Positions 19,101-40,300 of a stretch of 64,000 nt of DNA are shown in pieces. A model generated the notes under the pieces. That model was not told the origin of the DNA and did no database searches. It was given only the letters and a program-made list of their open reading frames with translations. The first letter of the stretch is position 1. Each line of letters opens with the position of its first letter. Location: assembly GCF_022045235.1 (NCBI RefSeq), contig NW_027266275.1:21514001-21578000 (forward strand), given 5' to 3'. Source of the DNA: Haliotis cracherodii. Taxonomy: Eukaryota. Both the position numbers and the translations under genes were made by a program.

Positions 19101-19251
19101 AGTGTGTTTCAGCAACAAACAAATATATTAACCATATAGAAACTACTGATACAATATGATTGTGCTTTTCCCAAAATGTTCTAATGATTTGTTAACAGTC
19201 CCAAAATAATCACAAAGGTTTAAGGGTGGCACAACAACACAAAATGTTGCT

Positions 19252-19927
19252 TCAAGCATTCATCTTGTTGGATGTGAACACTCTCTTGATCATGTTGATC
19301 ACACGGGACAGGAAGGCTCTCAAGAAAGACTGGGGCTTCACACGTGTGTCGTCATCTTCACAAAGAAGTATCTCAATGAAATCAGTGTCATCCATGATGA
19401 CCTGACCAGTGATGTTCACTGACACAGATGAGACAGGGTCGGGGAGGGACGTGACGGGTGAGGGCAGGAGGGACAGGGGGTGGGGACGGGTCACACAGCG
19501 CTGAGAGTAAGAAAGATAAAACAAGAGAAATGTTAAACACCAGTTTGAAGTTGACATTTGTTTATTTGTCAAGCGATGAATGAGTTGGTATGTGTGAGAT
19601 AGGAAATTGGTAAATATGTGTTTGGATAAGCTAAGGGCGGGTAGAGTAAAAGTAAGATCATAAGAGAAGAGTGTTTAAGAAATGAAAACCTTGTAGACTT
19701 TGTGCTCAGTCAATTGCAATGGGACAAATCTAGACAAGATTCGTCAACGTATGCTGCTTGCCAAAAGTGGCGTTTGTACACAAATCTTGACCTCTGTTTA
19801 CTTTAAAAAACGACTTCAAGCCTTTTTTAAAATGTGTACATATACAAGTTTTTAACCCATTGTCACCTACACGACGAGAGACAGGAGTGGTTGGGAGGAC
19901 GAGAACCTGGGGAAACCTTGTCGCCAT
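19252..19927 (-). CDS. Two-exon gene of unrecognised family, copy 1: 101-aa protein with LIR-like motif and C-terminal amphipathic helix
   Basis: Exon 1 is 19927-19871 (MATRFPQVLVLPTTPVSRR) with a GTAGGT donor. The 370-bp intron ends in tttctcttgttttatctttcttactctcag. Exon 2 is 19500-19252, phase 0, ending at TGA. Exons are GC-richer than the flanks. Confidence 0.72.
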
Positions 19928-20757
19928 CAGATCTATATCAGTGTAACAGTAAAGACGTTTTAAAATAGCGAATGAACAGGCGCCAAACGTGCATCAATAG
20001 ATTATTTATTCAAAAGCATTTGGGAAGGACAGACACCTTCATTCCTAAAAAAGCTTTACATCAACTCACAAGTGCTTTATAGATGAACCACGATACATTA
20101 TGTGTATAAAGTATTAGCAAATAAACAAACATCTTCATCTTCGTTTGCACCTGTGTTATCCCTACACATCGTCTTGCATGCCAACCAATAAAACAAAATT
20201 TTAGAGAAATGAGCCAGAAAACATCCATAACTTTGTACCTTGAACATAGCTGCTCGTCTGCATACTGACACTCAAAAGCGATGTTCAAACTAGCGCAGAT
20301 TCAAACCCGAGCGATATAGTCAGAAGATAATGCAACAACAATGGCGCCTGTTGACTTCGGAAGTCACTGGTTACGGTCGTCAAGGACGGAAGGGAGACCA
20401 CTCTCATTTGCGGAGACCTTGGAAAACCGCTAATATATAATCAGGTATTTTGCGTCTGCAATCACATCATTTATTCAAATAAGAAAACCCCAATTCAATG
20501 CTTTACGGAGCGCCAAAATTAATGTCTTATGTTGAAACGATATTTAATCAAATATAAAAGTACTGTTTAAAAACACCGAGCGAAAAACTGTTGCAATTTA
20601 GTGCACCCATACAGTAGGAGCTAGACGCCTCAGCACACTTCGGTGCAGTGATGACTTATCTTTAACCACACACTGAACACGATCGTCCCTTTCCGCTTAA
20701 AAAAGACCCCTGAGGTACCATTGTAATCCGGAACTATATTAACCTCTCGACCTCGCT

Positions 20758-20778
20758 AGCACATGACCGTCACGTGAT
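20758..20778. promoter_or_regulatory. Adjacent M-box (GTCATGTGCT, minus strand) and CLEAR-like E-box (GTCACGTGAT)
   Basis: AGCACATGACCGTCACGTGAT, about 830 bp upstream of the ATG; also at 26009, 31501 and 38149. Confidence 0.4.
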
Positions 20779-21396
20779 GTCAGTCGACGCCTATGATGAA
20801 CCCCTTGTCAGATGGAAAGGCCGCAGAAAACTGGTAATATGGTAGCGGCATGTGATTATGAATTGAGATAGATCACAACATAGCATCTTATGTGACAAAA
20901 AGCGTCCTTTCGGAAAAAGATATGCGGTTCTAAATGTGTGCCGATCATGATAACTCTAGAGCGTGTCCCATCGTGCTTGCACTTTCAGTCACCATGTTGG
21001 AATAATATTTGTATAAAGTTCTTTTGAATATATTAAGGATAAAAACTTGGAAATAGATAACTACTTATATACAATACTAACGAAAATTAAACATTGATAA
21101 ACAGTTAACGCGCTAAAATATGCATCTGCGAGTGTGTTTGGCTGAGGCATAAATTCCGACTCAATCCTCAATAAAGGCGGCCTAGGTTTGGTCGCCGGGG
21201 GCTTATAGGATGTTACTGCACGTAATTTAAACAGGTCTAAATATTATTGCTAAAATATGTTTGACAAAATGCTATTTATATATATACCATTAACATATAA
21301 TGACATGGTCTTAATTTCATAACGTCAACATGTCTGAAACATTGCCGATGCGACGTTATATATTTACTCACTCACTCACACTTCAACTAGCAAGTT

Positions 21397-21718
21397 AACT
21401 GGGGGGCAAAAGAAAGTAAACGCCAATGATTGATGGTGGCTAAAAATGAAACAAAGAAGAAATGGTTATTCGATGATGATGTATTTGAGACGGGTATCAT
21501 AGTAATGTTTTGGACTCAATCTCATTAAAATCAGATGTAAGTTCTCGTTGTCGCTAAACAAAGCACAGCGATAGCGAGAACTAAGATCTGATTTTAATGA
21601 GATTGGTTTTGGACCTTAAGTTACGGTGTCTCAGCCTAGTAAGGTTTTGATAACGTTTGTAGTTTTTTGATCAAATCAAATGTTCAAGACAGTGTATACT
21701 TTCTTTTGCCTAGCAGTT
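21397..21718. mobile_element. TA-type MITE with a nested short MULE-like foldback (21517-21605)
   Basis: Inverted homologue of 43559-43781. The nested caatctcattaaaatcagat...atctgattttaatgagattg has TSD gttttggac(t/c). Present in all four array copies. Confidence 0.75.
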
Positions 21719-24506
21719 TCGACCAAGTCAATGAAGGCCTAGCCAGGGGTATGGCTGAGGCGCAACCATCCAAGCCACACAATTACAGGTGTATCAAAAT
21801 TATACTTAGTTTTATTAAATTCAATGTGTATCAGTCATTGTCAATCTTGTTCATCTGATGTTCTTCGAACATATAATATGTATCTATAATTACTTGTAAA
21901 CATTTTATAATTGATAGTAAGCATTCTATTATTGGCCGATGACATGATAGACTCTATGGGAGACTAAAAAACTCACTGTTTATTAACTCAGGTCTGTTAG
22001 TGTGTGGGTAGGCCGTGAACAGGGGTACCTCTGCTGAGCGAGTCCACCTCCATCTCGCGTTTTAATACCTAATTTGACCTGTGCGTTTGAAGTATACTCC
22101 AACATTTGAGATCTACCGGATACTCTGTAGATGGTAAGCATCTGGGATTCTATGTCATATATTCTTTCAAATTACTATGTTTAATCTGTCACGCCATGAC
22201 ATGACAGATTAACTAGAGTAATATAAAAGAATCGGATGTTCCTTACTTTGTTTCAGTGGTATATATAGCATGCCTGTATGTATCAACTGAAAAGCTCGTC
22301 GTTTATTGTCAGCTATCACCAGTGGGAAGTGTTCCAAAGTGCGTGGTAGGACTTACAGCCCAGCTTTCAAATGTCGATCTGGAATCCTCTTTTATATTTC
22401 ACTTTTAGTGAAATAGAACTGCAAACAAACGAAGGACTGAGTGGATACCTGCAGCTAACCTGACATAACAGCAAAACACACAACTTGCCAGTGGTATAAA
22501 CTTCTCAAAGATTTACGGCTCTATGTATTCTAGGTTACCATATACTAGGCTAGCCATATATTGATGGCTATAAATGGTGCTGTCACATTTACCTGTATGT
22601 GGTTTATGGCTACAACTACAGTTGTCATTTTCTGATTCAGATCCCAGAGAGAGCCATTCGACGTGTAGAGTTGGGTCTCTTAGTCATGCCATGGACCTGC
22701 AGTTCGAGTTCCAATCCAAGTTTCGCCTCGATTATGGCTCTTTGTCAGTATGCATCTCTGTTTAAACCTAACTCACTCGCTGATTTCTATATACATTAAC
22801 ATATGGTTCAGAGACCATAAAATAGATCTATGTGATGGCCTCTGGTGTGATTAAGTCACGGTTTCAAAAAAACGTACTTAAATCGCCGCTTTATATATAA
22901 ATTAAATTCCATTCACAGACACATGGCCTTGTGGCGAACAAACATATATCGTCGTGCCATAGTTATTTTCAGTTGGGTAAATGTTTGTTTGTTTATGGAT
23001 TCCGAATGCAGCCATTCAGAATTTCCGCATTTTAGATAAGAGTTATCTTTCCTTTACTGTGTGACCTCCAAATTGTGTACAAACCAAGGGATAATGAAGC
23101 TTTTAATATATTAAAATAAATATTTATGTGTCTGGTTGTCATTTTTCATTCGCTGTTTGAAAACATAACCATGTACACAAAAACTCAGTAACAAAAAAAG
23201 CAATGGTCACCTTGTTATATCTAAAATCTGGAACTGATGAGAAACATTTTAAAAAAATTTCTGCGTGGCCTTATCCGCTTATCGTTGATATGGTTTATCA
23301 CGATAAAGAGAAATCTGTTGAATCACATAGTTACGAATGCCTGCATTAGCCTATCGATTGACTTGGGAGATAAATATTTAGTTTTGTAAGATTTGCGTGG
23401 TGTTATGCTGATTTGATGTACGGAAAAGGTCATTTGAACATGACTCCGTAAGGCCAAATAATATGATTGTGAACGGTCTAGGGTATTGTGTAGGACGCTG
23501 AGGTCCTGTCAGTCTCTATTCTGATCCTTATTTTCTACATCCACACTCGAATTTTCTTTGCACTCACGGAAAGAGGCGAGGTTGGCCGATTATTTATACT
23601 GTCACAAGCCAATTCGCATAACATATGAACGGTCGTTGTTTTTTTAATAAAAACCAAACCAAACGTGCTCATACTGAAATCGGATTAGTCAGTGATAATG
23701 GATGTCTTTCAATGCTATTTAGATTCCTGCGCTAATATCTTTGATTTGTGAGAGGTTTACTCAATAACTGAAAATACCAATATAAATTAAATTATTTTTC
23801 ATACTTTTTTATAAAATCTTGTGGGCGGTTATCCAGAATGTTAAGCATGCCCAGTGAAGCCATTTCTGACTTGACAGGTTTCATATAGTGTATATGGAGG
23901 TTTATATACTGTTTATCCCTTTGGAACCTTATTAAAATACATGTGATGTAATTGATATCGAATATATTATGTTCATGTTGTTTCAAGAGGTGTTCACATT
24001 AAGCATGTGGAAATTGGCAGATCTACATATCCTTCACCTGTGACTATGTAGAGATAATGTAGTGAGACAGGGTCCTTCAATAAAGGTCAAGGTCATTCGA
24101 ATAAATTGAACCTGAATAATGTTGTGATGAGGCAGGGTTGAGTGAATGGTTTGTGATGTTCTCCGAATATGGGCATGCTGAGAGCCAAATTTAGGTTGCC
24201 TTAAGTCATTAGTGACTAAGGGTATGTCAAATCAGAGATAGTTTAGGTTCCAAATAATAGGTTTCCAGAAAGATGCAATAAAAACAAACTTTCTTTTTTG
24301 TATCTGTTTAGCTAATCCACTAAGCCATTTGCTGGGGTTAACAAAGTCAGTAACAAGTGTGTTTCAGCAACAAACAAATATATTAACCATATAGAAACTA
24401 CTGATACAATATGATTGTGCTTTTCCCAAAATGTTCTAATGATTTGTTAACAGTCCCAAAATAATCACAAAGGTTTAAGGGTGGCACAACAACACAAAAT
24501 GTTGCT

Positions 24507-25182
24507 TCAAGCATTCATCTTGTTGGATGTGAACACTCTCTTGATCATGTTGATCACACGGGACAGGAAGGCTCTCAAGAAAGACTGGGGCTTCACACGT
24601 GTGTCGTCATCTTCACAAAGAAGTATCTCAATGAAATCAGTGTCATCCATGATGACCTGACCAGTGATGTTCACTGACACAGATGAGACAGGGTCGGGGA
24701 GGGACGTGACGGGTGAGGGCAGGAGGGACAGGGGGTGGGGACGGGTCACACAGCGCTGAGAGTAAGAAAGATAAAACAAGAGAAATGTTAAACACCAGTT
24801 TGAAGTTGACATTTGTTTATTTGTCAAGCGATGAATGAGTTGGTATGTGTGAGATAGGAAATTGGTAAATATGTGTTTGGATAAGCTAAGGGCGGGTAGA
24901 GTAAAAGTAAGATCATAAGAGAAGAGTGTTTAAGAAATGAAAACCTTGTAGACTTTGTGCTCAGTCAATTGCAATGGGACAAATCTAGACAAGATTCGTC
25001 AACGTATGCTGCTTGCCAAAAGTGGCGTTTGTACACAAATCTTGACCTCTGTTTACTTTAAAAAACGACTTCAAGCCTTTTTTAAAATGTGTACATATAC
25101 AAGTTTTTAACCCATTGTCACCTACACGACGAGAGACAGGAGTGGTTGGGAGGACGAGAACCTGGGGAAACCTTGTCGCCAT
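24507..25182 (-). CDS. Two-exon 101-aa gene, copy 2
   Basis: Exons 25182-25126 and 24755-24507; same protein as copy 1. Confidence 0.72.
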
Positions 25183-28100
25183 CAGATCTATATCAGTGTA
25201 ACAGTAAAGACGTTTTAAAATAGCGAATGAACAGGCGCCAAACGTGCATCAATAGATTATTTATTCAAAAGCATTTGGGAAGGACAGACACCTTCATTCC
25301 TAAAAAAGCTTTACATCAACTCACAAGTGCTTTATAGATGAACCACGATACATTATGTGTATAAAGTATTAGCAAATAAACAAACATCTTCATCTTCGTT
25401 TGCACCTGTGTTATCCCTACACATCGTCTTGCATGCCAACCAATAAAACAAAATTTTAGAGAAATGAGCCAGAAAACATCCATAACTTTGTACCTTGAAC
25501 ATAGCTGCTCGTCTGCATACTGACACTCAAAAGCGATGTTCAAACTAGCGCAGATTCAAACCCGAGCGATATAGTCAGAAGATAATGCAACAACAATGGC
25601 GCCTGTTGACTTCGGAAGTCACTGGTTACGGTCGTCAAGGACGGAAGGGAGACCACTCTCATTTGCGGAGACCTTGGAAAACCGCTAATATATAATCAGG
25701 TATTTTGCGTCTGCAATCACATCATTTATTCAAATAAGAAAACCCCAATTCATTTACGGAGCGCCAAAATTAATGTCTTATGTTGAAACGATATTTAATC
25801 AAATATAAAAGTACTGTTTAAAAACACCGAGCGAAAAACTGTTGCAATTTAGTGCACCCATACAGTAGGAGCTAGACGCCTCAGCACACTTCGGTGCAGT
25901 GATGACTTATCTTTAACCACACACTGAACACGATCGTCCCTTTCCGCTTAAAAAAGACCCCTGAGGTACCATTGTAATCCGGAACTATATTAACCTCTCG
26001 ACCTCGCTAGCACATGACCGTCACGTGATGTCAGTCGACGCCTATGATGAACCCCTTGTCAGATGGAAAGGCCGCAGAAAACTGGTAATATGGTAGCGGC
26101 ATGTGATTATGAATTGAGATAGATCACAACATAGCATCTTATGTGACAAAAAGCGTCCTTTCGGAAAAAGATATGCGGTTCTAAATGTGTGCCGATCATG
26201 ATAACTCTAGAGCGTGTCCCATCGTGCTTGCACTTTCAGTCACCATGTTGGAATAATATTTGTATAAAGTTCTTTTGAATATATTAAGGATAAAAACTTG
26301 GAAATAGATAACTACTTATATACAATACTAACGAAAATTAAACATTGATAAACAGTTAACGCGCTAAAATATGCATCTGCGAGTGTGTTTGGCTGAGGCA
26401 TAAATTCCGACTCAATCCTCAATAAAGGCGGCCTAGGTTTGGTCGCCGGGGGCTTATAGGATGTTACTGCACGTAATTTAAACAGGTCTAAATATTATTG
26501 CTAAAATATGTTTGACAAAATGCTATTTATATATATACCATTAACATATAATGACATGGTCTTAATTTCATAACGTCAACATGTCTGAAACATTGCCGAT
26601 GCGACGTTATATATTTACTCACTCACTCACACTTCAACTAGCAAGTTAACTGGGGGGCAAAAGAAAGTAAACGCCAATGATTGATGGTGGCTAAAAATGA
26701 AACAAAGAAGAAATGGTTATTCGATGATGATGTATTTGAGACGGGTATCATAGTAATGTTTTGGACTCAATCTCATTAAAATCAGATGTAAGTTCTCGTT
26801 GTCGCTAAACAAAGCACAGCGATAGCGAGAACTAAGATCTGATTTTAATGAGATTGGTTTTGGACCTTAAGTTACGGTGTCTCAGCCTAGTAAGGTTTTG
26901 ATAACGTTTGTAGTTTTTTGATCAAATCAAATGTTCAAGACAGTGTATACTTTCTTTTGCCTAGCAGTTTCGACCAAGTCAATGAAGGCCTAGCCAGGGG
27001 TATGGCTGAGGCGCAACCATCCAAGCCACACAATTACATGTGTATCAAAATTATACTTAGTTTTATTAAATTCAATGTGTATCAGTCATTGTCAATCTTG
27101 TTCATCTGATGTTCTTCGAACATATAATATGTATCTATAATTACTTGTAAACATTTTATAATTGATAGTAAGCATTCTATTATTGGCCGATGACATGATA
27201 GACTCTATGGGAGACTAAAAAACTCACTGTTTATTAACTCAGGTCTGTTAGTGTGTGGGTAGGCCGTGAACAGGGGTACCTCTGCTGAGCGAGTCCACCT
27301 CCATCTCGCGTTTTAATACCTAATTTGACCTGTGCGTTTGAAGTATACTCCAACATTTGAGATCTACCGGATACTCTGTAGATGGTAAGCATCTGGGATT
27401 CTATGTCATATATTCTTTCAAATTACTATGTTTAATCTGTCACGCCATGACATGACAGATTAACTAGAGTAATATAAAAGAATCGGATGTTCCTTACTTT
27501 GTTTCAGTGGTATATATAGCATGCCTGTATGTATCAACTGAAAAGCTCGTCGTTTATTGTCAGCTATCACCAGTGGGAAGTGTTCCAAAGTGCGTGGTAG
27601 GACTTACAGCCCAGCTTTCAAATGTCGATCTGGAATCCTCTTTTATATTTCACTTTTAGTGAAATAGAACTGCAAACAAATGAAGGACTGAGTGGATACC
27701 TGCAGCTAACCTGACATAACAGCAAAACACACAACTTGCCAGTGGTATAAACTTCTCAAAGATTTACGGCTCTATGTATTCTAGGTTACCATATACTAGG
27801 CTAGCCATATATTGATGGCTATAAATGGTGCTGTCACATTTACCTGTATGTGGTTTATGGCTACAACTACAGTTGTCATTTTCTGATTCAGATCCCAGAG
27901 AGAGCCATTCGACGTGTAGAGTTGGGTCTCTTAGTCATGCCATGGACCTGCAGTTCGAGTTCCAATCCAAGTTTCGCCTCGATTATGGCTCTTTGTCAGT
28001 ATGCATCTCTGTTTAAACCTAACTCACTCGCTGATTTCTATATACATAAACATATGGTTCAGAGACCATAAAATAGATCTATGTTATGGCCTCTGGTGTG

Positions 28101-29287
28101 ATTAAGTCATGGTTTCAAAAAATGTACTTAAATCGCCGCTTTATATATAAATTAAATTCCATTCACAGACACATGGCCTTGTGGCGAACAAACATATATC
28201 GTCGTGCCATAGTTATTTTCAATTGGGTAAATGTTTGTTTGTTTATCGATTCCGAATGCAGCCATTCAGAATTTCCGCATTTTAGATTAGAGTTATCTTT
28301 CCTTTGCTGTGTGACCTCCAAGTTGTGTACAAACCAAGGGATCATGAAGCTTTTAATATATTGAAATAAATATTTAAGTGTCTGGTTGTCATTTTTCATT
28401 CGCTGTTTGAAAACATAACCATGTACACAAAAATGCAGTAACAAAAAAAGCCTGGTCACCTTATTATTTCTAAAATCTGGAACTGATGAGAATCATTTTT
28501 TAAAATTTTCCCTGTGGCCTTATCCGCTTATCGTTGATATGGTTTATCACGATAAAGAGAAATCTGTTGAATCAGATAGTTACGAATGCCTGCATTAGCC
28601 TATCGATTGACTTGGGAGATAAATATTTCGTTTTGTAAGATCTGCGTGGTGTTATGCTGATTTGATGTACGGAAAAGGTCATTTGAACATGACTCCGTAA
28701 GGCCAAATAATATGATTGTGAACAGTCTAGGGCATCTTTAAGACGGTCTAGGGTATTGTGTAGGACGCTGAGGTCCTGTAAGTCTCTATTCTGATCCTTA
28801 TTTTCTACATCCACACTCGAATTTTCTTTGCGCTCACAGAAAGAGGCGAGGTTGGCCGATTATTTATACTGTCACAAGCCAATTCGCATAACATATGAAT
28901 GGACGTTGCTTTTTTAATAAAAACCAAACCAAACGTGCTCATACTGAAATCGGATTAGTCAGTGATAATGGATGTCTTTCAATGCTATTAAGATTCCTGC
29001 GCTAATATCTTTGATTTGTGAGAGGTTTGCTCCATAACTGAAAATACTAATATAAATTAAATTATTTTTTATACTTTTTTATAAAATCTTGTGGGCGCTT
29101 ATCCAGAATGTTAAGCATGCCCAGTGAAGCCATTTCTGACTTGACAGGTTTCATGCTTTTATCACAAAGTGCACAGTCCACCCATTTCTGTCTTGAAACG
29201 GCTGAACCACAAAACCTGCTTTTGTTATCAGAGAAAAAGGTCAATGCCTGTGTTGATGCTGTGCGTGTGCATGTTGTGTGGTGAGAG

Positions 29288-29290
<3 letters not shown>

Positions 29291-29321
<31 letters not shown>

Positions 29322-29370
29322 AGGGGGTGCGGGGGGGGGGGGGGGGGGGGGGTGGCCCCGACACACACAC
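29291..29370. repeat. (GT)n, poly-G and (AC)n microsatellite block
   Basis: Read directly; homologous block at about 36070-36150. Confidence 0.85.
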
Positions 29371-29994
29371 ACTAGGGGTAGGAGGTTTATATACTGTATT
29401 ATATCCCTTTGGAACCTTATTAAAATACATGTGATGTAATTGATATCGAATATATTATGTTCATGTTGTTTCAAGAGGTGTTCACATTAAGCATGTGGAA
29501 ATTGGCAGATCTACATATCCTTCACCTGTGACTATGTAGAGATAATGTAGTGAGACAGGGTCCTTCAATAAAGGTCAAGGTCATTCGAATAAATTGAACC
29601 TGAATAATGTTGTGATGAGGCAGGGTTGAGTGAATGGTTTGTGATGTTCTCCGAATATGGGCATGCTGAGAGCCAAATTTAGGTTGCCTTAAGTCATTAG
29701 TGACTAAGGGTATGTCAAATCAGAGATAGTTTAGGTTCCAAATAATAGGTTTCCAGAAAGATGCAATAAAAACAAACTTTCTTTTTTGTATCTGTTTAGC
29801 TAATCCACTAAGCCATTTGCTGGGGTTAACAAAGTCAGTAACAAGTGTGTTTCAGCAACAAACAAATATATTAACCATATAGAAACTACTGATACAATAT
29901 GATTGTGCTTTTCCCAAAATGTTCTAATGATTTGTTAACAGTCCCAAAATAATCACAAAGGTTTAAGGGTGGCACAACAACACAAAATGTTGCT

Positions 29995-30670
29995 TCAAGC
30001 ATTCATCTTGTTGGATGTGAACACTCTCTTGATCATGTTGATCACACGGGACAGGAAGGCTCTCAAGAAAGACTGGGGCTTCACACGTGTGTCGTCATCT
30101 TCACAAAGAAGTATCTCAATGAAATCAGTGTCATCCATGATGACCTGACCAGTGATGTTCACTGACACAGATGAGACAGGGTCGGGGAGGGACGTGACGG
30201 GTGAGGGCAGGAGGGACAGGGGGTGGGGACGGGTCACACAGCGCTGAGAGTAAGAAAGATAAAACAAGAGAAATGTTAAACACCAGTTTAAAGTTGACAT
30301 TTGTTTATTTGTCAAGCGATGAATGAGTTGGTATGTGTGAGATAGGAAATTGGTAAATATGTGTTTGGATAAGCTAAGGGCGGGTAGAGTAAAAGTAAGA
30401 TCATAAGAGAAGAGTGTTTAAGAAATGAAAACCTTGTAGACTTTGTGCTCAGTCAATTGCAATGGGACAAATCTAGACAAGATTCGTCAACGTATGCTGC
30501 TTGCCAAAAGTGGCGTTTGTACACAAATCTTGACCTCTGTTTACTTTAAAAAACGACTTCAAGCCTTTTTTAAAATGTGTACATATACAAGTTTTTAACC
30601 CATTGTCACCTACACGACGAGAGACAGGAGTGGTTGGGAGGACGAGAACCTGGGGAAACCTTGTCGCCAT
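29995..30670 (-). CDS. Two-exon 101-aa gene, copy 3
   Basis: Exons 30670-30614 and 30243-29995; same protein. Confidence 0.72.
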
Positions 30671-33600
30671 CAGATCTATATCAGTGTAACAGTAAAGACG
30701 TTTTAAAATAGCGAATGAACAGGCGCCAAACGTGCATCAATAGATTATTTATTCAAAAGCATTTGGGAAGGACAGACACCTTCATTCCTAAAAAAGCTTT
30801 ACATCAACTCACAAGTGCTTTATAGATGAACCACGATACATTATGTGTATAAAGTATTAGCAAATAAACAAACATCTTCATCTTCGTTTGCACCTGTGTT
30901 ATCCCTACACATCGTCTTGCATGCCAACCAATAAAACAAAATTTTAGAGAAATGAGCCAGAAAACATCCATAACTTTGTACCTTGAACATAGCTGCTCGT
31001 CTGCATACTGACACTCAAAAGCGATGTTCAAACTAGCGCAGATTCAAACCCGAGCGATATAGTCAGAAGATAATGCAACAACAATGGCGCCTGTTGACTT
31101 CGGAAGTCACTGGTTACGGTCGTCAAGGACGGAAGGGAGACCACTCTCATTTGCGGAGACCTTGGAAAACCGCTAATATATAATCAGGTATTTTGCGTCT
31201 GCAATCACATCATTTATTCAAATAAGAAAACCCCAATTCAATGCTTTACGGAGCGCCAAAATTAATGTCTTATGTTGAAACGATATTTAATCAAATATAA
31301 AAGTACTGTTTAAAAACACCGAGCGAAAAACTGTTGCAATTTAGTGCACCCATACAGTAGGAGCTAGACGCCTCAGCACACTTCGGTGCAGTGATGACTT
31401 ATCTTTAACCACACACTGAACACGATCGTCCCTTTCCGCTTAAAAAAGACCCCTGAGGTACCATTGTAATCCGGAACTATATTAACCTCTCGACCTCGCT
31501 AGCACATGACCGTCACGTGATGTCAGTCGACGCCTATGATGAACCCCTTGTCAGATGGAAAGGCCGTAGAAATCTGGTAATATGGTAGCGGCATGTGATT
31601 ATGAATTGCGATAGATCACAACATAGCATCTTATGTGACAAAAAGCCTCCTTTCGTAAAAAGATATGCGGTTCTAAATGTGTGCCGATCATGATAACTCT
31701 AGAGCGTGTCCCATCGTGCTTGCACTTTCAGTCAACATGTTGGAATAATATTTGTATAAAGTTCTTTTGAATATATTAAGGATAAAAACTTGGAAATAGA
31801 TAACTACTTATATACAATACTAACGAAAATTAAACATTGATAAACAGTTAACGCGCTAAAATATGCATCTGCGAGTGTGTTTGGCTGAGGCATAAATTCC
31901 GACTCAATCCTCAATAAAGGCGGCCTAGGTTTCGTTGTGGGGGGCTTATAGGATGTTACTGCACGTAATTTAAACAGGTCTAAATGTTATTGCTAAAATA
32001 TGTTTGACAAAATGCTATTTATATATATACCATTAACATTTAATGACATGGTCTTAATTTCATAACGTCAACATGTCTGAAACATTGCCGATGCGAGTTT
32101 ATATATTTACTCACTCACTCACACTTCAACTAGCAAGTTAACTGGGGGGCAAAAGAAAGTAGACGCCAATGATTGATGGTGGCTAAAAATGAAACAAAGA
32201 AGAAATGGTTATTCGATGATGATGTATTTGAGACGGGTATCATAGCAATGTTTTGGACTCAATCTCATTAAAATCAGATCTAAGTTCTCGTTGTCGCTAA
32301 ACAAAGCATAGCGATAGCGAGAACTAAGATCTGATTTTAATGAGATTGGTTTTGGACCTTAAGTTAGGGTGTCTCAGCCTAGTAAGGTTTTGATAACGTA
32401 GTTTTTTGATCAAATCAAATGTTCAAGACAGTGTATACTTTCTTTTGCCTAGCAGTTTCGACCAAGTCAATGAAGGCCTAGCCAGGGGTATGGCTGAGGC
32501 GCAACCATCCAAGCCACACAATTACAGGTGTATCAAAATTATACTTAGTTTTATTAGGACCTGTCCTTCATACTAATACATATATGTATACATGTAAACA
32601 AATTGAAATTGTATATAGATTAAATCATTCTTTTGGGGCCTTAGTCGTGATATACTAAAAGTGAACGACTGTCAATGTATTAAGAAAAGTATAACATGGA
32701 TCATACTAGTTTATAACATACGTCTAAACAAATTGGTGTATGATGGACTTTTCCTACATCAATAATTCCTGTACATTTCCATGTTTCGTTTGCATTTCAA
32801 ATGCAATGTAATTCAATACGAAACGTTCATGCTTCAATCTCATTAAAATTAGATCTTTAACTCCGATTCAACACCACACTGCGTGAATATCCGACGACAC
32901 CTCCATAGAAGGTCGCGAACCTTGACCTAAATGAAATGAAGAATGCGGGTTCTTGAGCCAATCAGATGTTAGCTTCATAACCACCACGTGTCGGAATCTT
33001 TTGACCTATCAAAAACAACCACAGAACTAGAATATGACCCCGATATAACAACCTTTTGGGTGTATATGTCACAGCGCTAAGAACCGACATGGTGTATGAA
33101 ACATACACAACAATATAGTCGTGCGGCTATATTTTTTCCATTCGAAAACAACCACAGAACTAGAATATGACCCCGATATTACTACCTTTTGGGTGTACAT
33201 GTCACGGCGCTCAGAACCGACATGGTGTGTCGATATTCGATTAAATAAACTGCCGGGCGAAGAAAGTTGGACTTGAAAATAGGATTTGACCAAACAGTTT
33301 TCAAACATTACTTAGTATCTTGAAATTTCAACATAACATTAAAATTTTAAAAACCCAGCAACAAAGGGCCCTAAAAGGCTTCCGTAAGATAGCGTCACTA
33401 AAGTTCAAAATAGCAACTTTATCGCCAGTTTAATAAGACAAAAAGATTATCGGTCGGTCACAGATCACTCTGTGGCTGACTAATAAACGCACTGTTTTCA
33501 CTCGGGGGAATAACGTTTACAATCTTCTCTCTGTTATGTCTTAACGTACTAACACTTTTGACAATACAAGCAAGTTCATGTGGTAATGTGATGTCGTATC

Positions 33601-36069
33601 TTTGTGTATATTTTAGATATTCTCGTTGTAATTCTGATGTGGATAGATTATGTCAATCCTCAGAATGTTGTTTACATTGGAATATGCATTGGAACTAACG
33701 TAATACATATATTGTGTGAATGCCCACTCGGATAATGTATTTAATTTGACTGTGTCGCGTGCACTATATGAGTACCATTCAATCACGTGTAACTTGTTGT
33801 TTATTGTATAATAAGGACCCTGTGTATAATTTAAATTCAATGTGTATCAGTCATTGTCAATCTTGTTCATCTGATGTTCTTCGTACATCTAATGTGTATC
33901 TATAATTACTTGTAAACATTTTATAATTGATAGTAAGCATTCTATTAATGGCCGATGACATGATAGACTCTATGGGAGACTAAAAAACTCACTGTTTATT
34001 AACTCAGGTCTGTTTGTGTGTGGGTAGGCCGTGAACAGGGGTACCTCTGCTGAGCGAGTCGACCCCCATCTCGCGTTTTAATACCTAATTTGACCTGTGC
34101 GTTTGAAGTATACTCCAACATTTGAGATCTACCGGACACTCTGTAGATGGTCAGCATCTGGGATTCTATGTCATATATACTGACAACAAAGATTCTTTCA
34201 AATTACAATGTTTAATCTGTCACGCCATGACATGACAGATTAACTAGAGTAATGTAAAAGAATCGGATGTTCCTTACTTTGTTTCAGTGGTATATATAGC
34301 ATGCCTGTATGTATCAACTGAAAAGCTCATCCTTTATTGTCAGCTATCACCAGTGGGAAGTGTTCAAAAGTGCGTGGTAGGACTTACAGCCCAGCTTTCA
34401 AATGTTGATCTGGAATCCTCTTTTATATTTCACTTTTAGTGAAATAGAAATGCAAATAAACGAAGGACTGAGTGGATACCTGCAGCTAACCTGACATAAC
34501 AGCAAAACACACAACTTGCCAGTGGTATAAACTTCTCAAAGATTTACGGCTCTATGTATTCTAGGTTACCATATACTAGGCTAGCCATATATTGATGGCT
34601 ATAAATGGTGCTGTCACATTTACCTGTATGTGGTTTATGGCTACAACTACAGTTGTCATTTTCTGATTCAGATCCCAGAGAGAGCCATTCGACGTGTAGA
34701 GTTGGGTCTCTTAGTCATGCCATGGACCTGCAGTTCGAGTTCCAATCCAAGTTTCGCCTCGATTATGGCTCTTTGTCAGTATGCATCTCTGTTTAAACCT
34801 AACTCACTCGCTGATTTCTATATACATTAACATATGGTTCAGAGACCATAAAATAGATCTATGTTATGGCCTCTGGTGTGATTAAGTCACGGTTTCAAAA
34901 AAACGTACTTAAATCGCCGCTTTATATATAAATTAAATTCCATTCACAGACACATGGCCTTGTGGCGAACAAACATATATCGTTGTGCCATAGTTATTTT
35001 CAGTTGGGTAAATGTTTGTTTGTTTATGGATTCCGAATGCAGCCATTCAGAATTTCCGCATTTTAGATAAGAGTTATCTTTCCTTTACTGTGTGACCTCC
35101 AAATTGTGTACAAACCAAGGGATCATGAAGCTTTTAATATATTAAAATAAATATTTATGTGTCTGGTTGTCATTTTTCATTCGCTGTTTGAAAACATAAC
35201 CATGTACACAAAAACTCAGTAACAAAAAAAGCAATGGCCACCTTGTTATTTCTAAAATCTGGAACTGATGAGAAACATTTTTTTAAATTTTCTCTGTGGC
35301 CTTATCCGCTTATCGTTGATATGGTTTATCACGATAAAGAGAAATCTGTTGAATCAGATAGTTACGAATGCCTGCATTAGCCTATCGATTGACTTGGGAG
35401 ATAAATATTTCGTTTTGTAAGATCTGCGTGGTTTTATGCTGATTTGATGTACGGAAAAGGTCATTTGAACATGAATCCGTAAGGCCAAATAATATGATTG
35501 TGAACAGTCTAGGGCATCTTTAAGACGGTCTAGGGTATTGTGTAGGACGCTGAGGTCCTGTAAGTCTCTATTCTGATCCTTATTTTCTACATCCACACTC
35601 GAATTTTCTTTGCGCTCACGGAAAGAGGCGAGGTTGGCCGATTATTTATACTGTCACAAGCCAATTCGCATAACATATGAACGGTCGTTGCTTTTTTAAT
35701 AAAAACCAAACCAAACGTGCTCATACTGAAATCGGATTAGTCAGTGATAATGGATGTCTTTCAATGCTATTTAGATTCCTGCGCTAATATCTTTGATTTG
35801 TGAGAGGTTTACTCCATAACTGAAAATACTAATATAAATTTAATTATTTTTTATACTTTTTTTTATAAAATCTTGTGGGCGCTTATCCAGAATGTTAAGC
35901 ATGCCCAGTGAAGCCATTTCTGACTTGACAGGTTTCATGCTTTTATCACAAAGTGCACAGTCCACCCATTTCTGTCTTGAAACGGCTGAGCCACAAAACC
36001 TGCTTTTGTTATCAGAGAAAAAGGTCAATGCCTGTGTTGATGCTGTGCGTGTGCATGTTGTGTGGTGAG

Positions 36070-36112
<43 letters not shown>

Positions 36113-36642
36113 CGTGCCCCACCCCACCCCCACCCCCCGACACACACACACTAGGGGTAGGAGGTTTATATACTGTATTATATCCCTTTGGAACCTTATT
36201 AAAATACATGTGATGTAATTGATATGAAATATATTATGTTCATGAACCTGAATAATGTTGTGATGAGGCAGGGTTGAGTGAATGGTTTGTGATGTTCCCC
36301 GAATATGGGCATGCTGAGAGCCAAATTTAGGTTGCATTAAGTCATTAGTGACTGAGGGAATGTCAAATCAGAGATAGTTCAGGTTCCAAATAATTGGTTT
36401 CCAGAAAGATGCAATCAAAACAAACTTTCTTTTTTGTATCTGTTTAGCTAATCCACTAAGCCATTTACTGGGGTTAACAAAGTCAGTAACAAGTGTGTTT
36501 CAGCAACAAACAGATATATTAACCATATAAAAACTACTGATACAATATGATTGTGCTTTTCCCAAAATGTTCTAATGATTTGTTAACAGTCCCAAAATAA
36601 TCACAAAGGTTTAAGGGTGGCACAACAACACAAAATGTTGCT

Positions 36643-37318
36643 TCAAGCATTCATCTTGTTGGATGTGAACACTCTCTTGATCATGTTGATCACACGGGAC
36701 AGGAAGGCTCTCAAGAAAGACTGGGGCTTCACACGTGTGTCGTCATCTTCACAAAGAAGTATCTCAATGAAATCAGTGTCATCCATGATGACCTGACCAG
36801 TGATGTTCACTGACACAGATGAGACAGGGTCGGGGAGGGACGTGACGGGTGAGGGCAGGAGGGACAGGGGGTGGGGACGGGTCACACAGCGCTGAGAGTA
36901 AGAAAGATAAAACAAGAGAAATGTTAAACACCAGTTTAAAGTTGACATGTGTTTATTTGTCAAGCGATGAATGAGTTGGTATGTGTGAGATAGGAAATTG
37001 GTAAATATGTGTTTGGATAAGCTAAGGGCGGGTAAAGTAAAAGTAAGATCATAAGAGAAGAGTGTTTAAGAAATGAAAACCTTGTAGACTTAGTGCTCAG
37101 TCAATTGCAATGGGACAAATCTAGACAAGATTCGTCAACGTATGCTGCTTGCCAAAAGTCGCGTTTGTACACAAATCTTGACCTCTGTTTACTTTAAAAA
37201 ACGACTTCAAGCCTTTTTTAAAATGTGTACATATACAAGTTTTTAACCCATTGTCACCTACACGACGAGAGACAGGAGTGGTTGGGAGGACGAGAACCTG
37301 GGGAAACCTTGTCGCCAT
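36643..37318 (-). CDS. Two-exon 101-aa gene, copy 4
   Basis: Exons 37318-37262 and 36891-36643; CDS unchanged although the intron and flanks carry substitutions. Confidence 0.72.
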
Positions 37319-40300
37319 CAGATCTATATTAGTGTAACAGTAAAGACGTTATAAAATAGCGTATGAACAGGCGCCAAACGTGCACCAATTGATTATTTAT
37401 TCAAAAGCATTTGGGAAGGACAGACACCTTCATTCCTAAAAAAGCTTTACATCAACTCACAAGTGCTTTATAGATGCACCACGATACATTATGTGTATAA
37501 AGTATTAGCAAATAAACAAACATCTTCATCTTCGTTTGCACCTGTGTTATCCCTACACATCGTCTTGCATGCCAACCAATAAAACAAAATTTTAGGGAAA
37601 TGAGCCAGAAAACATCCATTACTTTGTACCTTGAACATAGCTGCTCGTCTGCATACTGACAGTCAAAAGCGATGTTCAAACTAGCGTAGATTCAAACACG
37701 AGCGATATATTCAGAAGATAATGCAACAACAATGGCGCCTATTGACTTCGGAAGTCACTGGTTACGGTCGTCAAGGACGGAAGGGAGACCACTCTCATTT
37801 GCGGAGACCTTGGAAAACTGCTAATATATAATCAGGTATTTTGCGTCTGCAATCACATCATTTATTCAAATAAGAAAACCCCAATGCGATGCTTTACGGA
37901 GCGCCAAAATTAATGTCTTATGTTGAAACGATATTTAATCAAATATAAAAGTACTGTTTAAAAACGCCGAGCGAAAAACTGTTGCAATTGAGTGCACCCA
38001 TACAGTAGGAGAGAGACGCCTCAGCACACTTCGGTGCAGTGATGACGTATCTTTAACCACACACTGAACACGATTGGCCCTTTCCGCTTAAAAAAGACCC
38101 CTGAGGTACCATTGTAATCCGGAACTATATTAACCTCTCGACCTCGTTAGCACATGACCGTCACGTGATGTCTGTCGACCCCTATGATGAACCCCTTGTC
38201 AGATGGAAAGGCCGCAGAAAACTGGTAATATGGTAGCGGCATGTGATTATGAATTGAGATAGATCACAACATAGCATCTTATGTGACAAAAAGCGTCCTT
38301 TCGGAAAAAGATATGCGGTTCTAAATGTGTGCCGATCATGATAACTCTAGAGCGTGTCCCATCGTGCTTGCACTTTCAGTCACCATGTTGGAATACTATT
38401 TGTATAAAGTTCTTTTGAATATATTAAGGATAAAAACTTGGAAATAGATAACTACTTATATACAATACTAACGAAAATTAAACATTGATAAACATGTCAA
38501 AATGTTTCAAAAGTTTGACAAAATGCTATTTATATATATACCATTAACATATAATGACATGGTCTTAATTTCATAACGTCAACATGTCTGAAACATTGAC
38601 GATGCGAAGTTATATAATTACTCACTCACTCACACTTCAACTAGCAAGTTAACTGGGGGGCAAAAGAAAGTAAACGCCAATGATTGATGGTGGCTAAAAA
38701 TGAAACAAAGAAGAAATGGTTATTCGATGATGATGTATTTGAGACGGGTATCATAGTAATGTTTTGGACTCAATCTCATTAAAATCAGATCTAAGTTCTC
38801 GTTGTCGCTAAACAAAGCATAGAGATAGCGAGAACTAAGATCTGATTTTAATGAGATTGGTTTTGGACCCTAAGTTTCGATGTCTCAGCCTAGTAAGGTT
38901 TTGATAACGTTTGTAGTTTTTTGATCAAATCAAATGTTCAAGACAGTGAATACTTTCTTTTGCCTAGCAGTTTCGACCAAGTCAATGAAGGCCTAGCCAG
39001 GGGTATGGCTGAGGCGCAACCACCCAAGCCACACAATTACAGGTGTATCAAAATTATACTTAGTTTTATTAGGACCTGCCCTTCATACTAATACATATAT
39101 GTATACATGTAAACAAATTGAAATTGTATATAGATTAAATCATTCTTTTGGGGCCTTAGTCGTAATATACTAAAAGTGAACGACTGTCAATGTATTAAGA
39201 AAAGTATAACATGGATCATACTAGTTTACAACATACGTCTAAACAAATTGGTGTATGATGGACTTTACCTACATCAATAATTCCTGTACATTTCCATGTT
39301 TCGTTTGCATTTCAAAGTCAATGTAATTCAATACGAAACGTTCATGCTTCAATCTCATTAAAATTAGATCTTTAACTCCGATTCAACACCACACTGCGTG
39401 AATATCCGACGTCACCTCCATAGAAGGTCGCGAACCTTGACCTAAATGAAGAATGCGGGTTCTTGAGCCAATCAGATGTTAGCTTTTCTGAAACGATTCA
39501 GCTTCATAACCACCACGATTCGGAATTTTTTTACCTATCGAAAACAACCACAGAACTAGAATATGACCCCGATATTACTACCTTTTGGGTGTACATGTCA
39601 CGGCGCTAAGAACCGACTTGGTGTATGAAACATACACAACAATATAGTCGTGCGGCTTTATTTTTTCCATTCGGAACACCCGATTATGTTAGTTTTGGAG
39701 ATACAGAAATACAAAGATTCCAATCTGTAGTGACTGATGTTGATATCTTCTGACTCACTTGCCCAAGCTGTGGTAATGATATCATCATTTAGGTTGAAAT
39801 TTTCCTGAAACAAACAATACTGATCATAAAGTAAAAATAGAAGAAAATAGAAATAGTATTTTTTGTTTGTTTTTATAATCAAACATCCTTTATTAAAAAT
39901 ATATGTCCAGAAATATTTTTAAAAAGTGTTTGTGCTCTTTAGTAAAAAAATTCATTTCAAGTCTTCATACTAGAATTTGCTATTATTCATAGTTGTTAGG
40001 AAAACATTACTAAAAATGTTTCATGTATACTACAATTTCTTATGGGTTTTATTTTGCAAGTGAAATTACCAAAATATTTTACGTATCAGCTGAGGTCTGC
40101 AAGCAAAAGTAATTAGTTGTCTGGACACAACAATATGTGACATGCACAGAGCATTGCAGTGGGGCCCTTTTAAGGATGTATTGAAAGTTGTTTTTAATGC
40201 ACGCATATAAATTTTTTACATGTACGTTTAAAAGATAGGCATGCTACGTAAAAGTATATAAATTATCTATGAAAAATTTAAGAAACGAGAATAATTGCAA

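What the first reader, a model, noticed from the sequence alone, without database searches (positions are those of the whole stretch)
19252..37318. Four tandem copies of a hidden spliced 101-aa gene built like an ATG8-binding membrane adaptor
Seen: the ORF track splits this gene. Splicing GTAGGT to a long polypyrimidine tract ending in CAG (phase 0) gives MATRFPQVLVLPTTPVSRRRCVTRPHPLSLLPSPVTSLPDPVSSVSVNITGQVIMDDTDFIEILLCEDDDTRVKPQSFLRAFLSRVINMIKRVFTSNKMNA, identical in all four copies. Established: LIR/AIM motifs are [W/F/Y]-x-x-[L/I/V] preceded by acidic residues, and DTDFIEI closely resembles the optineurin LIR (EDSFVEI). FLRAFLSRVINMIKRVF has hydrophobic residues at helical periodicity with Arg/Lys on the opposite face, i.e. 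a basic amphipathic helix. Inference: a disordered Pro/Ser N-half, a LIR and a membrane-binding tail match the layout of small selective-autophagy receptors, here dosage-amplified. I do not recognise the protein family.
Basis: partly seen in the sequence, partly recalled or inferred. Interest (0 to 1): 0.85.

Follow-up and report, generated by a model that had tools for sequence, protein, structure and literature searches.

The report
Amplified abalone small-protein gene family
The four tandem genes are real and identical, but already annotated: they belong to a family of over 110 small, mostly disordered abalone proteins with a conserved LC3-interaction-like motif and a basic amphipathic end helix, of untested function.

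Summary
The window is black abalone (Haliotis cracherodii) chromosome DNA.

Three points need correcting:
- The gene is not hidden. RefSeq lists it four times as a 111-aa "uncharacterized protein".
- The annotated model has a further upstream coding exon.
- The whole 5.3-6.6 kb unit is duplicated at 96-99% identity, so identity among copies 1-3 says nothing about selection.

Coding constraint is shown by other evidence:
- Copy 4 has 0/336 CDS differences against 2.2% in non-coding DNA.
- The genome holds at least 110 open paralogues in tandem arrays on 13 contigs.
- Contigs of one probably-RNA run end exactly at three of the four exon boundaries.

The acidic F-[VI]-[ED]-[IV]-x-L motif is kept in 66 of 70 loci. 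The +4/+5 amphipathic C-terminal helix is kept in every subfamily.

No Pfam, PDB or literature match exists. The family is seen only in Haliotis, with a weak lead to jellyfish repeat proteins. ATG8 binding is untested, because the complex prediction gave no answer.

Best reading: a membrane-tethered linear-motif adaptor, with ATG8/FIP200 the leading but unproven partner.

The parts
16031..39673 (.). Tandem segmental duplication block: four units of about 5.3, 5.3, 5.5 and 6.6 kb, 96-99% identical including non-coding DNA
   Evidence: Self-BLAST of the window. Gene spacing is 5255, 5488 and 6648 nt.
20239..20384 (-). Copy 1, first exon: 5'UTR plus the first 25 coding nt. ATG at 20263; encodes MQTSSYVQ and the first base of Asp9. 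Donor GT at 20238-20237. The upper limit near 20384 is approximate.
   Evidence: X3 contig 28 starts exactly at 20239 and fits up to 20384.
19871..19932 (-). Copy 1, second coding exon (62 nt).
   Evidence: Piecewise translation equals P0001 residues 10-29, and AG/GT flank the exon. X3 contigs 26 and 27 break at 19871.
19252..19500 (-). Copy 1, last coding exon (82 codons plus stop). It carries PLSLLP, the DDTDFIEILLCEDDD motif and the C-terminal amphipathic helix.
   Evidence: X3 contig 25 ends exactly at 19500.
18388..19251 (-). Copy 1, probable 3'UTR. The first AATAAA/ATTAAA lies 858 nt after the stop.
   Evidence: Contigs of X1 and X3 cover 18761-19251. The extent is inferred.
25494..25518 (-). 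Copy 2, coding part of the first exon
25126..25187 (-). Copy 2, second coding exon
24507..24755 (-). Copy 2, last coding exon
30982..31006 (-). Copy 3, coding part of the first exon
30614..30675 (-). Copy 3, second coding exon
29995..30243 (-). Copy 3, last coding exon
37630..37654 (-). Copy 4, coding part of the first exon
37262..37323 (-). Copy 4, second coding exon
36643..36891 (-). Copy 4, last coding exon. This is the most diverged unit: 2.2% in non-coding DNA and 0 in the CDS.

Best explanation
Each unit carries a real gene with three coding exons that encodes a 111-aa, largely disordered cytosolic protein. RefSeq calls it an 'uncharacterized protein' of Haliotis cracherodii.

The four copies are a young tandem array within a family of at least 110 genes. 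So far the family is seen only in abalone. It is under purifying selection, concentrated on two elements: an acidic F-[VI]-[ED]-[IV]-x-L linear motif and a C-terminal cationic amphipathic helix.

Most likely mechanism (inferred, not shown): the helix lies on the cytosolic face of an acidic membrane. From there the disordered chain presents its conserved short motifs (PLSxLP and the acidic F-x-x-I/V-x-L) to conserved cytosolic partners.

The leading candidate partner for the F motif is the LIR-docking site of GABARAP/LC3, or the FIP200 Claw. I put ATG8-family binding at about 0.2-0.25 overall.
For: Gene and annotation:
- Exon 2 matches a 111-aa RefSeq protein at 100% identity. That protein carries four accessions, plus an H. 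rufescens orthologue at 96%.
- All four copies fit the three-exon model piece by piece, with GT/AG introns.
- The exon structure and the N-terminal M-x-S-x-Y-[VT]-Q peptide are kept in other subfamilies.

Splicing:
- Contigs of run X3 end or start exactly at 19500, 19871 and 20239, with 30-nt overlaps and unequal depths (10.9, 3.9, 28.2).
- That is the pattern a k=31 graph gives at splice branch points.

Selection:
- Copy 4 has 0/336 CDS differences against 42/1915 non-coding differences.
- The profile search finds 120 matches in the genome, about 112 of them full-length and open.
- Pairwise dN/dS is 0.26-0.5.
- Regional pN/pS is 0.30 for the motif, 0.35 for the helix, and 0.60-0.76 elsewhere.

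Motif:
- F and the +5 Leu are invariant, and +3 is I or V, in 66/70 loci.
- Acidic residues lie at -1 and -3 in the window's gene, and an acidic run at +6 to +10.
- Published definitions are LIR [W/F/Y]-x-x-[I/L/V], GIM [W/F]-[V/I]-x-V (PMC5538626) and the OPTN LIR/FIR DS-FVEI, with an acidic +7 raising affinity (PMC7615515).

Disorder and helix:
- AF2 gives mean pLDDT 60 and no structure at residues 65-86. Residues 87-108 form a helix, with a mean pLDDT of 84 for residues 91-100.
- Hydrophobic moment is 0.52-0.67 and charge +4/+5. At most 1.1% of shuffles reach the observed moment.
Against: - No binding, localisation or expression experiment exists.
- No homologue has a known function, and no paper mentions the family.
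- The complex prediction with GABARAP gave no answer. It counts neither way.
- In the largest subfamily (DAPHFVDINL) the -1 to -3 positions are H, P and A rather than acidic or phosphorylatable, which is atypical for strong LIRs.
- A conserved V-x-I-x-L pattern could equally be a beta strand that pairs with another protein, or with the protein's own helix.
- The AF2 model has low confidence, so 'disordered' is a weak inference.
- In X3 the contig over intron 1 has the same depth as exon 0 and does not break at 19932. Splicing of intron 1 is therefore not shown by reads here.
- A family of more than 110 near-identical adaptors is hard to explain by ordinary autophagy-receptor biology.
Confidence: 0.4

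Rival explanations
1. The protein is a miniature selective-autophagy receptor or adaptor. The F-I-E-I motif is a functional LIR that docks on ATG8 (GABARAP/LC3), and the helix anchors it to the membrane or cargo. Gene amplification raises dosage.
For: - The core motif and the acidic flanks of the window's gene fit the published LIR definition and closely match the OPTN DS-FVEI.
- Subfamily B and P0019 carry F-V-E-V, which matches the GIM exactly.
- The motif is conserved across the family and sits in a region predicted to be unstructured.
- The abalone genome encodes a GABARAP (L061).
Against: - Binding is untested, and the prediction job gave no answer.
- [WFY]xx[LIV] is a very permissive pattern. 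Conservation shows the motif is functional, not that it binds ATG8.
- The biggest subfamily lacks acidic or phosphorylatable residues at -1 to -3.
- The invariant +5 Leu and the conserved PLSxLP are not LIR features.
- No cargo-binding module is evident.
- More than 110 copies is unlike any known autophagy receptor.
Confidence: 0.22
2. A self-masked membrane-active or regulatory peptide. The acidic segment (DDTDF...EDDD) neutralises the cationic amphipathic helix in cis, as acidic propieces do in cationic antimicrobial peptide precursors. Release by cleavage, pH or phosphorylation frees a membrane-active or calmodulin-type helix. Amplification would then reflect an immune or arms-race role.
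For: - An acidic block directly precedes a +4/+5 helix with a high hydrophobic moment in every subfamily.
- Large, fast-turning tandem arrays are typical of immune or reproductive arms-race genes (general knowledge).
- The helix has bulky anchors spaced as in 1-5-10 calmodulin-binding helices (my reading of the sequence, from memory).
Against: - The N-terminal 30 residues of any subfamily contain no hydrophobic signal-peptide core (by inspection), so the classical secreted antimicrobial-peptide route is unlikely.
- pN/pS of 0.30-0.35 on the motif and helix shows conservation rather than diversifying selection.
- There is no conserved cleavage site between the acidic block and the helix.
Confidence: 0.15
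3. An ampliconic, possibly germline-restricted or selfish gene family. Copy number is driven by unequal crossing-over, gene conversion or genetic conflict rather than by a housekeeping cellular role. The conserved motifs bind some lineage-specific partner unrelated to autophagy or membranes.
For: - There are arrays of 4 to about 20 near-identical units on many chromosomes.
- Units within an array are 96-99% identical including non-coding DNA, which indicates recent amplification or homogenisation.
- The family is restricted to one genus as far as could be seen.
Against: - Purifying selection on specific residues across subfamilies means a conserved molecular function exists.
- There is no tissue information.
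- This reading concerns why the family is amplified, and it is compatible with the adaptor mechanism.
Confidence: 0.13
4. Not a functional protein. The ORF is an accident of a duplicated, transcribed non-coding unit or a TE-derived fragment, and RefSeq merely predicted it.
For: - RefSeq XP_ models are predictions.
- No protein-level evidence was available here.
- Copies 1-3 are identical only because the duplication is recent.
- High-copy repeats lie inside each unit (bins 21155-21745, 22140-22336 and 23125-23518).
Against: - About 112 of 120 paralogous exon-2 copies are open over 36-100% identity.
- dN/dS is below 0.5.
- The phase-0 acceptor and the three-exon structure are conserved.
- Copy 4 shows 0 CDS differences against 2.2% non-coding.
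- No TE domain is found.
Confidence: 0.04

Closest known systems
RefSeq 'uncharacterized protein' XP_071106952.1 / XP_071106955.1 / XP_071106957.1 / XP_071106960.1 (Haliotis cracherodii), and LOC125378077 (H. rufescens)
   Same: The H. cracherodii protein is the same gene. Exon translations equal this 111-aa protein piece by piece in all four copies. The H. rufescens orthologue is 96% identical.
   Different: The records carry no function, no domain and no family name.
Optineurin LIR/FIR (DS-FVEI) and the GABARAP interaction motif [W/F]-[V/I]-x-V of PLEKHM1
   Same: An acidic or phosphorylatable flank precedes F-[VI]-E-[IV]. Paralogues carry exactly F-V-E-I and F-V-E-V. Acidic residues follow at about +7.
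   Different: There is no sequence homology outside the motif. Optineurin and PLEKHM1 are large multidomain proteins, whereas this is a 111-aa disordered protein. Binding is untested. The largest subfamily has H-P-A at -1 to -3.
Small membrane-anchored LIR receptors (BNIP3/NIX, FUNDC1), and extended LIRs followed by an amphipathic helix (FAM134B, ankyrin-G/B, FYCO1)
   Same: The layout is a disordered segment with a LIR-type motif plus a C-terminal membrane-interacting or helical element. PMC7615515 describes LIRs followed by an amphipathic helix that strengthens binding.
   Different: BNIP3/NIX and FUNDC1 use true transmembrane segments (from memory). Here the helix is too polar and basic for a transmembrane span, and it starts at +17, not +7, from the aromatic residue. 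There is no homology, and none of those genes is amplified.
Cationic amphipathic membrane-targeting helices such as the MinD C-terminal targeting sequence (from memory: ...GFLKRLFGG)
   Same: It is a short C-terminal helix with G-F-L-[KR]-R-[LV]-F in subfamily C, a high hydrophobic moment and positive charge.
   Different: This is a resemblance of pattern only, recalled from memory. MinD is a bacterial ATPase. No homology is claimed, and membrane binding was not tested.
Giant repeat proteins of scyphozoan jellyfish (Rhopilema esculentum XP_065069079.1; a Sanderia malayensis protein)
   Same: Each 185-190-aa repeat holds three look-alike motifs in the same order: QPLSLEP, STDFNFEDLEEDE and GFVRTISGKVTGRFKRIF.
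   Different: Each repeat scores only 2-10 bits against the abalone profile. The whole-protein E-values are inflated by repetition. hhalign local P is 1.2e-4 with probability 56%, covering the C-terminal 49 columns only. The +3 position is E, not I/V. Homology is not established, and these proteins are also uncharacterised.

Membership tests
LIR/AIM-bearing ATG8-binding proteins | Core motif [W/F/Y]-x-x-[L/I/V] | tested here: met
   The window gene has F-I-E-I. F-[VIE]-[EDV]-[IV] is present in 66/70 paralogous loci. The definition is from PMC5538626.
LIR/AIM-bearing ATG8-binding proteins | Acidic or phosphorylatable residues at -1 to -3 of the aromatic residue | tested here: inconclusive
   Met in the window gene and in subfamilies A and B (D-T-D, D-S-D). 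Weak in subfamilies C and D (A-P-H, A-S-H, with Asp only at -4). The requirement is from PMC7615515.
LIR/AIM-bearing ATG8-binding proteins | The motif lies in an accessible, disordered segment | tested here: inconclusive
   The AF2 model shows no secondary structure at residues 65-86 and pLDDT about 51-54 there. The model is low-confidence overall (mean 59.7, pTM 0.20).
LIR/AIM-bearing ATG8-binding proteins | Direct binding to the LIR-docking site (HP1/HP2) of an ATG8 protein | not testable with these tools
   The complex-prediction job with a GABARAP returned 'no answer' (ipSAE 0.05). It is not evidence either way.
GABARAP interaction motif (GIM), [W/F]-[V/I]-x-V | Val at the +3 position with V/I at +1 | tested here: not met
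   The window gene has F-I-E-I, with Ile at +3. Only subfamily B and P0019 (F-V-E-V, F-I-E-V) conform.
Peripheral membrane-binding cationic amphipathic helices | Helical propensity, high hydrophobic moment and net positive charge | tested here: met
   AF2 predicts a helix at 87-108. Hydrophobic moment is 0.52-0.67 and charge +4/+5, and at most 1.1% of shuffles reach the observed value, in all abalone subfamilies.
Peripheral membrane-binding cationic amphipathic helices | Actual association with lipid bilayers | not testable with these tools
   This needs liposome flotation or localisation experiments.
Secreted cationic antimicrobial-peptide precursors | N-terminal signal peptide | tested here: not met
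   By inspection, the N-termini of P0001, P0002, P0018, P0019 and P0020 lack a hydrophobic core. No signal-peptide predictor was available.
Transposable-element or viral gene | TE or viral protein domain, or terminal repeats bounding the unit | tested here: not met
   There is no Pfam hit. The 1.84-billion-protein profile search returned nothing from viruses. The atlas hit to a viral cluster, at 0.78, is below the chance level. The genes sit in head-to-tail arrays with conserved introns.
SUMO-interacting motif | Three hydrophobic residues in four ([VIL]-x-[VIL]-[VIL] or [VIL]-[VIL]-x-[VIL]) next to an acidic run | tested here: not met
   I-E-I-L fits in the window gene only. The family consensus V-E-I-D-L or V-D-I-N-L alternates and does not fit. 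The consensus definition is from memory.

The most novel reading that the evidence does not exclude
Abalone have amplified to more than 110 copies a miniature module made of PLSxLP, an acidic F-x-x-I/V-x-L motif and a cationic amphipathic helix. The module would tether GABARAP/LC3 or FIP200 to a membrane. It would be homologous to the repeat unit of giant scyphozoan proteins, making it an old metazoan three-motif module that nobody has described.
Probability: 0.1. Interest if true: 0.75.

Novelty: new member of a known kind. Interest (0 to 1): 0.4.

Why it matters
As a gene, it is already in RefSeq, so the 'hidden gene' claim fails. What is new is the family-level picture:
- It is one of the largest tandemly amplified families in the abalone genome.
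- It has no domain, no literature and no function.
- It shows clear purifying selection focused on a LIR-like linear motif and a membrane-type helix.

If the motif does bind ATG8 or FIP200, this would be the smallest and by far the most amplified class of autophagy adaptors known. It would also offer a natural library of LIR variants (FIEI, FVEI, FVEV, FVDI, FEEI).

If it does not, the family is still a tractable case of how taxon-restricted, disordered, motif-bearing proteins arise and expand. Black abalone is critically endangered and affected by withering syndrome (general knowledge), so large lineage-specific families are worth screening in infection and stress transcriptomes.

Tried and rejected
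- **Complex prediction** of an insect GABARAP (P0159 residues 1-117, 97% identical to the abalone GABARAP exon in L061) with P0001 residues 56-95 gave 'no answer': ipSAE 0.05 and 0.03, controls not run. It is not used for or against binding.
- **Pfam** on exon 2, P0001 and P0002 gave nothing.
- **PDB** profile search gave only a chance hit at E=1.8.
- **ESM Atlas** gave 0.78 to a viral hypothetical cluster, which is below the chance level, and nothing among named clusters.
- **Literature** searches for locus names and motif strings returned 0 papers. A broader search on Haliotis orphan and tandem families found nothing relevant.
- **The search for homologous proteins** with P0022 found only itself.
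The source species of P0022 and P0024 therefore stay unknown.
- **P0022 as cDNA evidence** was rejected. Its N-terminus (…LPPHQ) looks like a gene-caller reading through the intron's pyrimidine tract into exon 2.
- **SUMO-interacting motif, clathrin box, FFAT, RVxF and acidic dileucine** readings of the motifs were considered. By inspection they do not fit the family consensus.
- **TE origin** was rejected (see the membership test).
- **Fold search** was not run, because the model is too low in confidence.
- **The joined spliced protein** was never typed or sent to a tool. Searches used exon 2 by reference (window:19255-19500:-) and the database protein P0001. Exon 1 alone (19 aa) was too short for Pfam.
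- The 19871/19500 joint itself was not among the 15 joints printed (96 were not shown), so the splice evidence rests on contig ends.

Full report
**1. What is in the sequence**

- Exon 1 lies at 19871-19927, 25126-25182, 30614-30670 and 37262-37318.
- Exon 2 lies at 19252-19500, 24507-24755, 29995-30243 and 36643-36891.

The intron is 370 nt. It starts GTAGGT and ends in a long pyrimidine tract plus CAG, in phase 0.

A self-comparison of the window shows that the whole unit is tandemly duplicated, not only the gene. Positions 16031-39673 form four units of about 5.3-6.6 kb at 96-99% identity.

Copies 1-3 differ at 0-1 positions in 676 nt of intron. Their identical proteins therefore carry no information about selection.

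Copy 4 is informative. Against copy 1 it has 42 differences in 1915 nt of intron, UTR and flank (2.2%), but none in 336 nt of CDS. About 7.4 were expected, giving a Poisson P of about 6e-4.

**2.

Exon 2, searched by reference, hits a 111-aa protein at 100% identity. That protein is called 'uncharacterized protein [Haliotis cracherodii]'.
- It carries four RefSeq accessions, XP_071106952/55/57/60, one per copy.
- An H. rufescens orthologue, LOC125378077, is 96% identical.
- The window is G000:C12:21514001-21578000 of a 1.18-Gb assembly.

A first coding exon (ATG at 20263, ending at 20239) encodes MQTSSYVQ plus the first base of Asp9. It is spliced GT/AG to 19932.

All four copies translate, piece by piece, to the RefSeq protein. 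For full-length work I used the database protein P0001.

The upstream exon is conserved in the paralogues:
- Their N-termini read M-x-S-x-Y-[VT]-Q.
- The three-exon structure recurs.

So the 111-aa model is the better one.

**3. Transcription and splicing**

Only one read-laying run was allowed, and all four runs were stored as contigs.

Runs X15 and X16 cover nearly the whole unit. Like X1, their contigs run straight through the introns, as DNA or unspliced RNA would.

Run X3 comes from another species label and is guessed to be RNA. It behaves differently.
- Its contigs are 19162-19500 (depth 10.9), 19471-19900 (3.9), 19871-20268 (28.2) and 20239-20384 (28.6).
- Consecutive contigs overlap by exactly 30 nt.
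- They break exactly at 19500, 19871 and 20239.

Those are three of the four exon boundaries. A k=31 assembly graph gives this pattern where spliced and unspliced paths branch, and such coincidences are very unlikely by chance.

Two caveats apply.
- The junction contig itself was not among the joints printed.
- There is no break at 19932, and intron 1 has the same depth as exon 0. Intron 1 may therefore be largely retained in that sample. This is unresolved.

**4. A very large family**

A six-frame search of the same genome with exon 2 finds 100 matches. A profile of 15 diverse members finds 120, of which about 112 are full-length with no stop.

They lie in head-to-tail arrays on contigs C3, C5, C7, C9, C11, C12, C16, C23, C27, C34, C45, C56 and C80. 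Examples are about 20 copies at C3:20.22-20.35 Mb, nine at C80:29.30-29.38 Mb and seven on C27.

Amino-acid identity to the window gene runs from 36% to 100%. The phase-0 acceptor with a strong pyrimidine tract is conserved.

An exhaustive profile search of 1.84 billion representative proteins gives only these hits:
- Haliotis proteins (cracherodii, rufescens, asinina);
- two short ENA fragments of unknown origin;
- three giant jellyfish proteins.

Pfam, PDB sequences, the ESM Atlas and the literature give nothing.

**5. Selection and conserved features**

Pairwise Nei-Gojobori dN/dS is 0.26-0.30 between the window gene and the C3 subfamily. Subfamily medians are 0.33-0.48.

Splitting the alignment over 11 independent pairs gives these pN/pS values:

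| Region | pN/pS |
|---|---|
| Motif (-4 to +9) | 0.30 |
| 18-residue helix | 0.35 |
| Pro-rich N part | 0.60 |
| Linker | 0.76 |
| Tail | 0.67 |

Residues invariant across subfamilies are the Leu and Leu-Pro of PLSxLP, a Thr, the Phe of the motif, the Leu at +5, a Ser, L-S-R and one Arg in the helix.

Motif variants are FVEIDL, FVDINL, FVEVDL, FIEILL, FVEINL, FVDIDL, FEEIDL and a few others. That is F-[VIE]-[EDV]-[IV]-x-L in 66 of 70 loci read.

AF2 with a 16-sequence alignment gives a low-confidence model:
- mean pLDDT is 59.7;
- residues 57-64 form a small hairpin;
- residues 65-86 have no structure;
- residues 87-108 form a helix, and the 10-residue block 91-100 has a mean pLDDT of 84.

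The helix has a hydrophobic moment of 0.52-0.67 and a charge of +4 to +5 in every abalone subfamily. At most 1.1% of shuffles reach the observed value.

**6. How it most likely works**

Shown:
- It is a spliced gene.
- It is under purifying selection.
- It encodes a small protein with no detectable globular domain.
- Constraint sits on a short acidic-aromatic-aliphatic motif and on a cationic amphipathic C-terminal helix.

Inferred: the helix lies on a membrane surface. It is too polar to span one. The disordered chain then presents linear motifs to partners.

The F motif fits the published LIR definition, and paralogues match the GIM. It nearly copies the optineurin LIR/FIR DS-FVEI, including acidic residues around +7 that are reported to raise affinity (PMC5538626; PMC7615515). 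The same review notes that such motifs can also bind the FIP200 Claw.

That makes ATG8-family proteins or FIP200 the leading candidates. I put ATG8-family binding at only about 0.2-0.25, for these reasons:
- The pattern is permissive.
- The largest subfamily has H-P-A rather than acidic residues just before the Phe.
- The invariant +5 Leu and the PLSxLP motif are unexplained by a LIR.
- No known autophagy receptor is amplified a hundredfold.

The one complex prediction allowed gave no answer, and I do not count it.

The rivals are:
- a self-masked cationic peptide, with the acidic block covering the helix;
- a calmodulin-type helix;
- an ampliconic or conflict-driven family with an unrelated partner.

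A non-coding or TE artefact is unlikely, for the reasons given in sections 4 and 5.

**7. Comparison with what is known, and novelty**

The gene equals an existing RefSeq record, so the 'hidden gene' claim fails.

The family has no name, domain, structure or paper. It resembles LIR-bearing adaptors in layout, but membership cannot be claimed because the defining property, binding, is untested.

A lead worth noting concerns the jellyfish proteins. Their 185-190-aa repeats contain QPLSLEP, STDFNFEDLEEDE and GFVRTISGKVTGRFKRIF in the same order as the abalone motifs. Each repeat scores only 2-10 bits, however, and hhalign gives P=1.2e-4 with probability 56% for the C-terminal part alone. Homology is not established.

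**8. Verdict**

The functional claim remains a hypothesis. The 'hidden' and 'four-copy dosage' framing is wrong.

Interest is moderate: a large, uncharacterised, clearly constrained family with a testable motif hypothesis.

Noticed in passing
P0021, P0023, P0025, P0039 (not in the window): Giant scyphozoan proteins (Rhopilema esculentum XP_065069079.1, Sanderia malayensis, one ENA record) consist of 185-190-aa (371 in Sanderia) tandem repeats. Each repeat carries look-alikes of the three abalone motifs in the same order. Statistical support is weak (hhalign local P=1.2e-4).
   Followed up: partly
G000:C12:21638731-21638977 (+), about 60 kb beyond the window end; locus L058: A fifth, degenerate copy of exon 2 lies on the opposite strand. 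It is 75-85% identical, with an in-frame TGA and a frame break. It is probably a pseudogene left by the array. Another fragment lies at C12:41446614-41446805 (L031, FVEF variant, truncated helix).
   Followed up: partly
L009:2856-2984 and L013:2807-2935: In the C3 arrays, a second partial family-like reading frame lies about 1.1 kb downstream of each gene's stop. It matches residues 65-109 of P0002 at 40-42% identity. It may be a diverged partner gene or a relic in every unit.
   Followed up: no
window 21155-21745, 22140-22336, 23125-23518 (and the equivalent places in the other units): These stretches inside each unit have contig depths in the hundreds to hundreds of thousands in the sequencing runs, with many loose ends at 21567-21607. 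They are high-copy interspersed repeats embedded in the intergenic part of the unit.
   Followed up: no
window 3703-3774 and 48479-48550 (minus strand): Rfam tRNA matches sit just at the gathering score (29.4 bits) and ARAGORN does not call them. They look like tRNA-derived SINE heads. The first lies inside the SINE noted earlier at 3605-3800, and BLAST links 3909-4174 with 50818-51076 and 56532-56787.
   Followed up: no
window 43770-44423; 53869-54229; 54721-55505; 60782-61421; 15694-16058: Five satellite or minisatellite arrays: 83-bp unit x8 (with a CACT microsatellite core), 72-bp x5, 18-bp x43, 18/24/42-bp x15-33, and a 42-43-bp palindromic unit x8 just upstream of the duplication block.
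   Followed up: no
window 19283-19443 as seen in run X3, and 19304 and 19362 in X1 and X15: Relatives carry exon-2 differences. X3 has four replacements (P>S, V>L, R>H, R>T) and two silent changes. X1 and X15 have C>G at the Cys after the motif, as in H. rufescens. R>H hits the nearly invariant Arg of L-S-R. The F-x-x-I core is untouched.
   Followed up: partly
L061:1534-1731 (G000:C16): The abalone GABARAP gene has a 66-codon central exon that is 97% identical to insect GABARAP. Many database 'proteins' hit by it are single-exon gene-caller artefacts with intron-derived ends.
   Followed up: no
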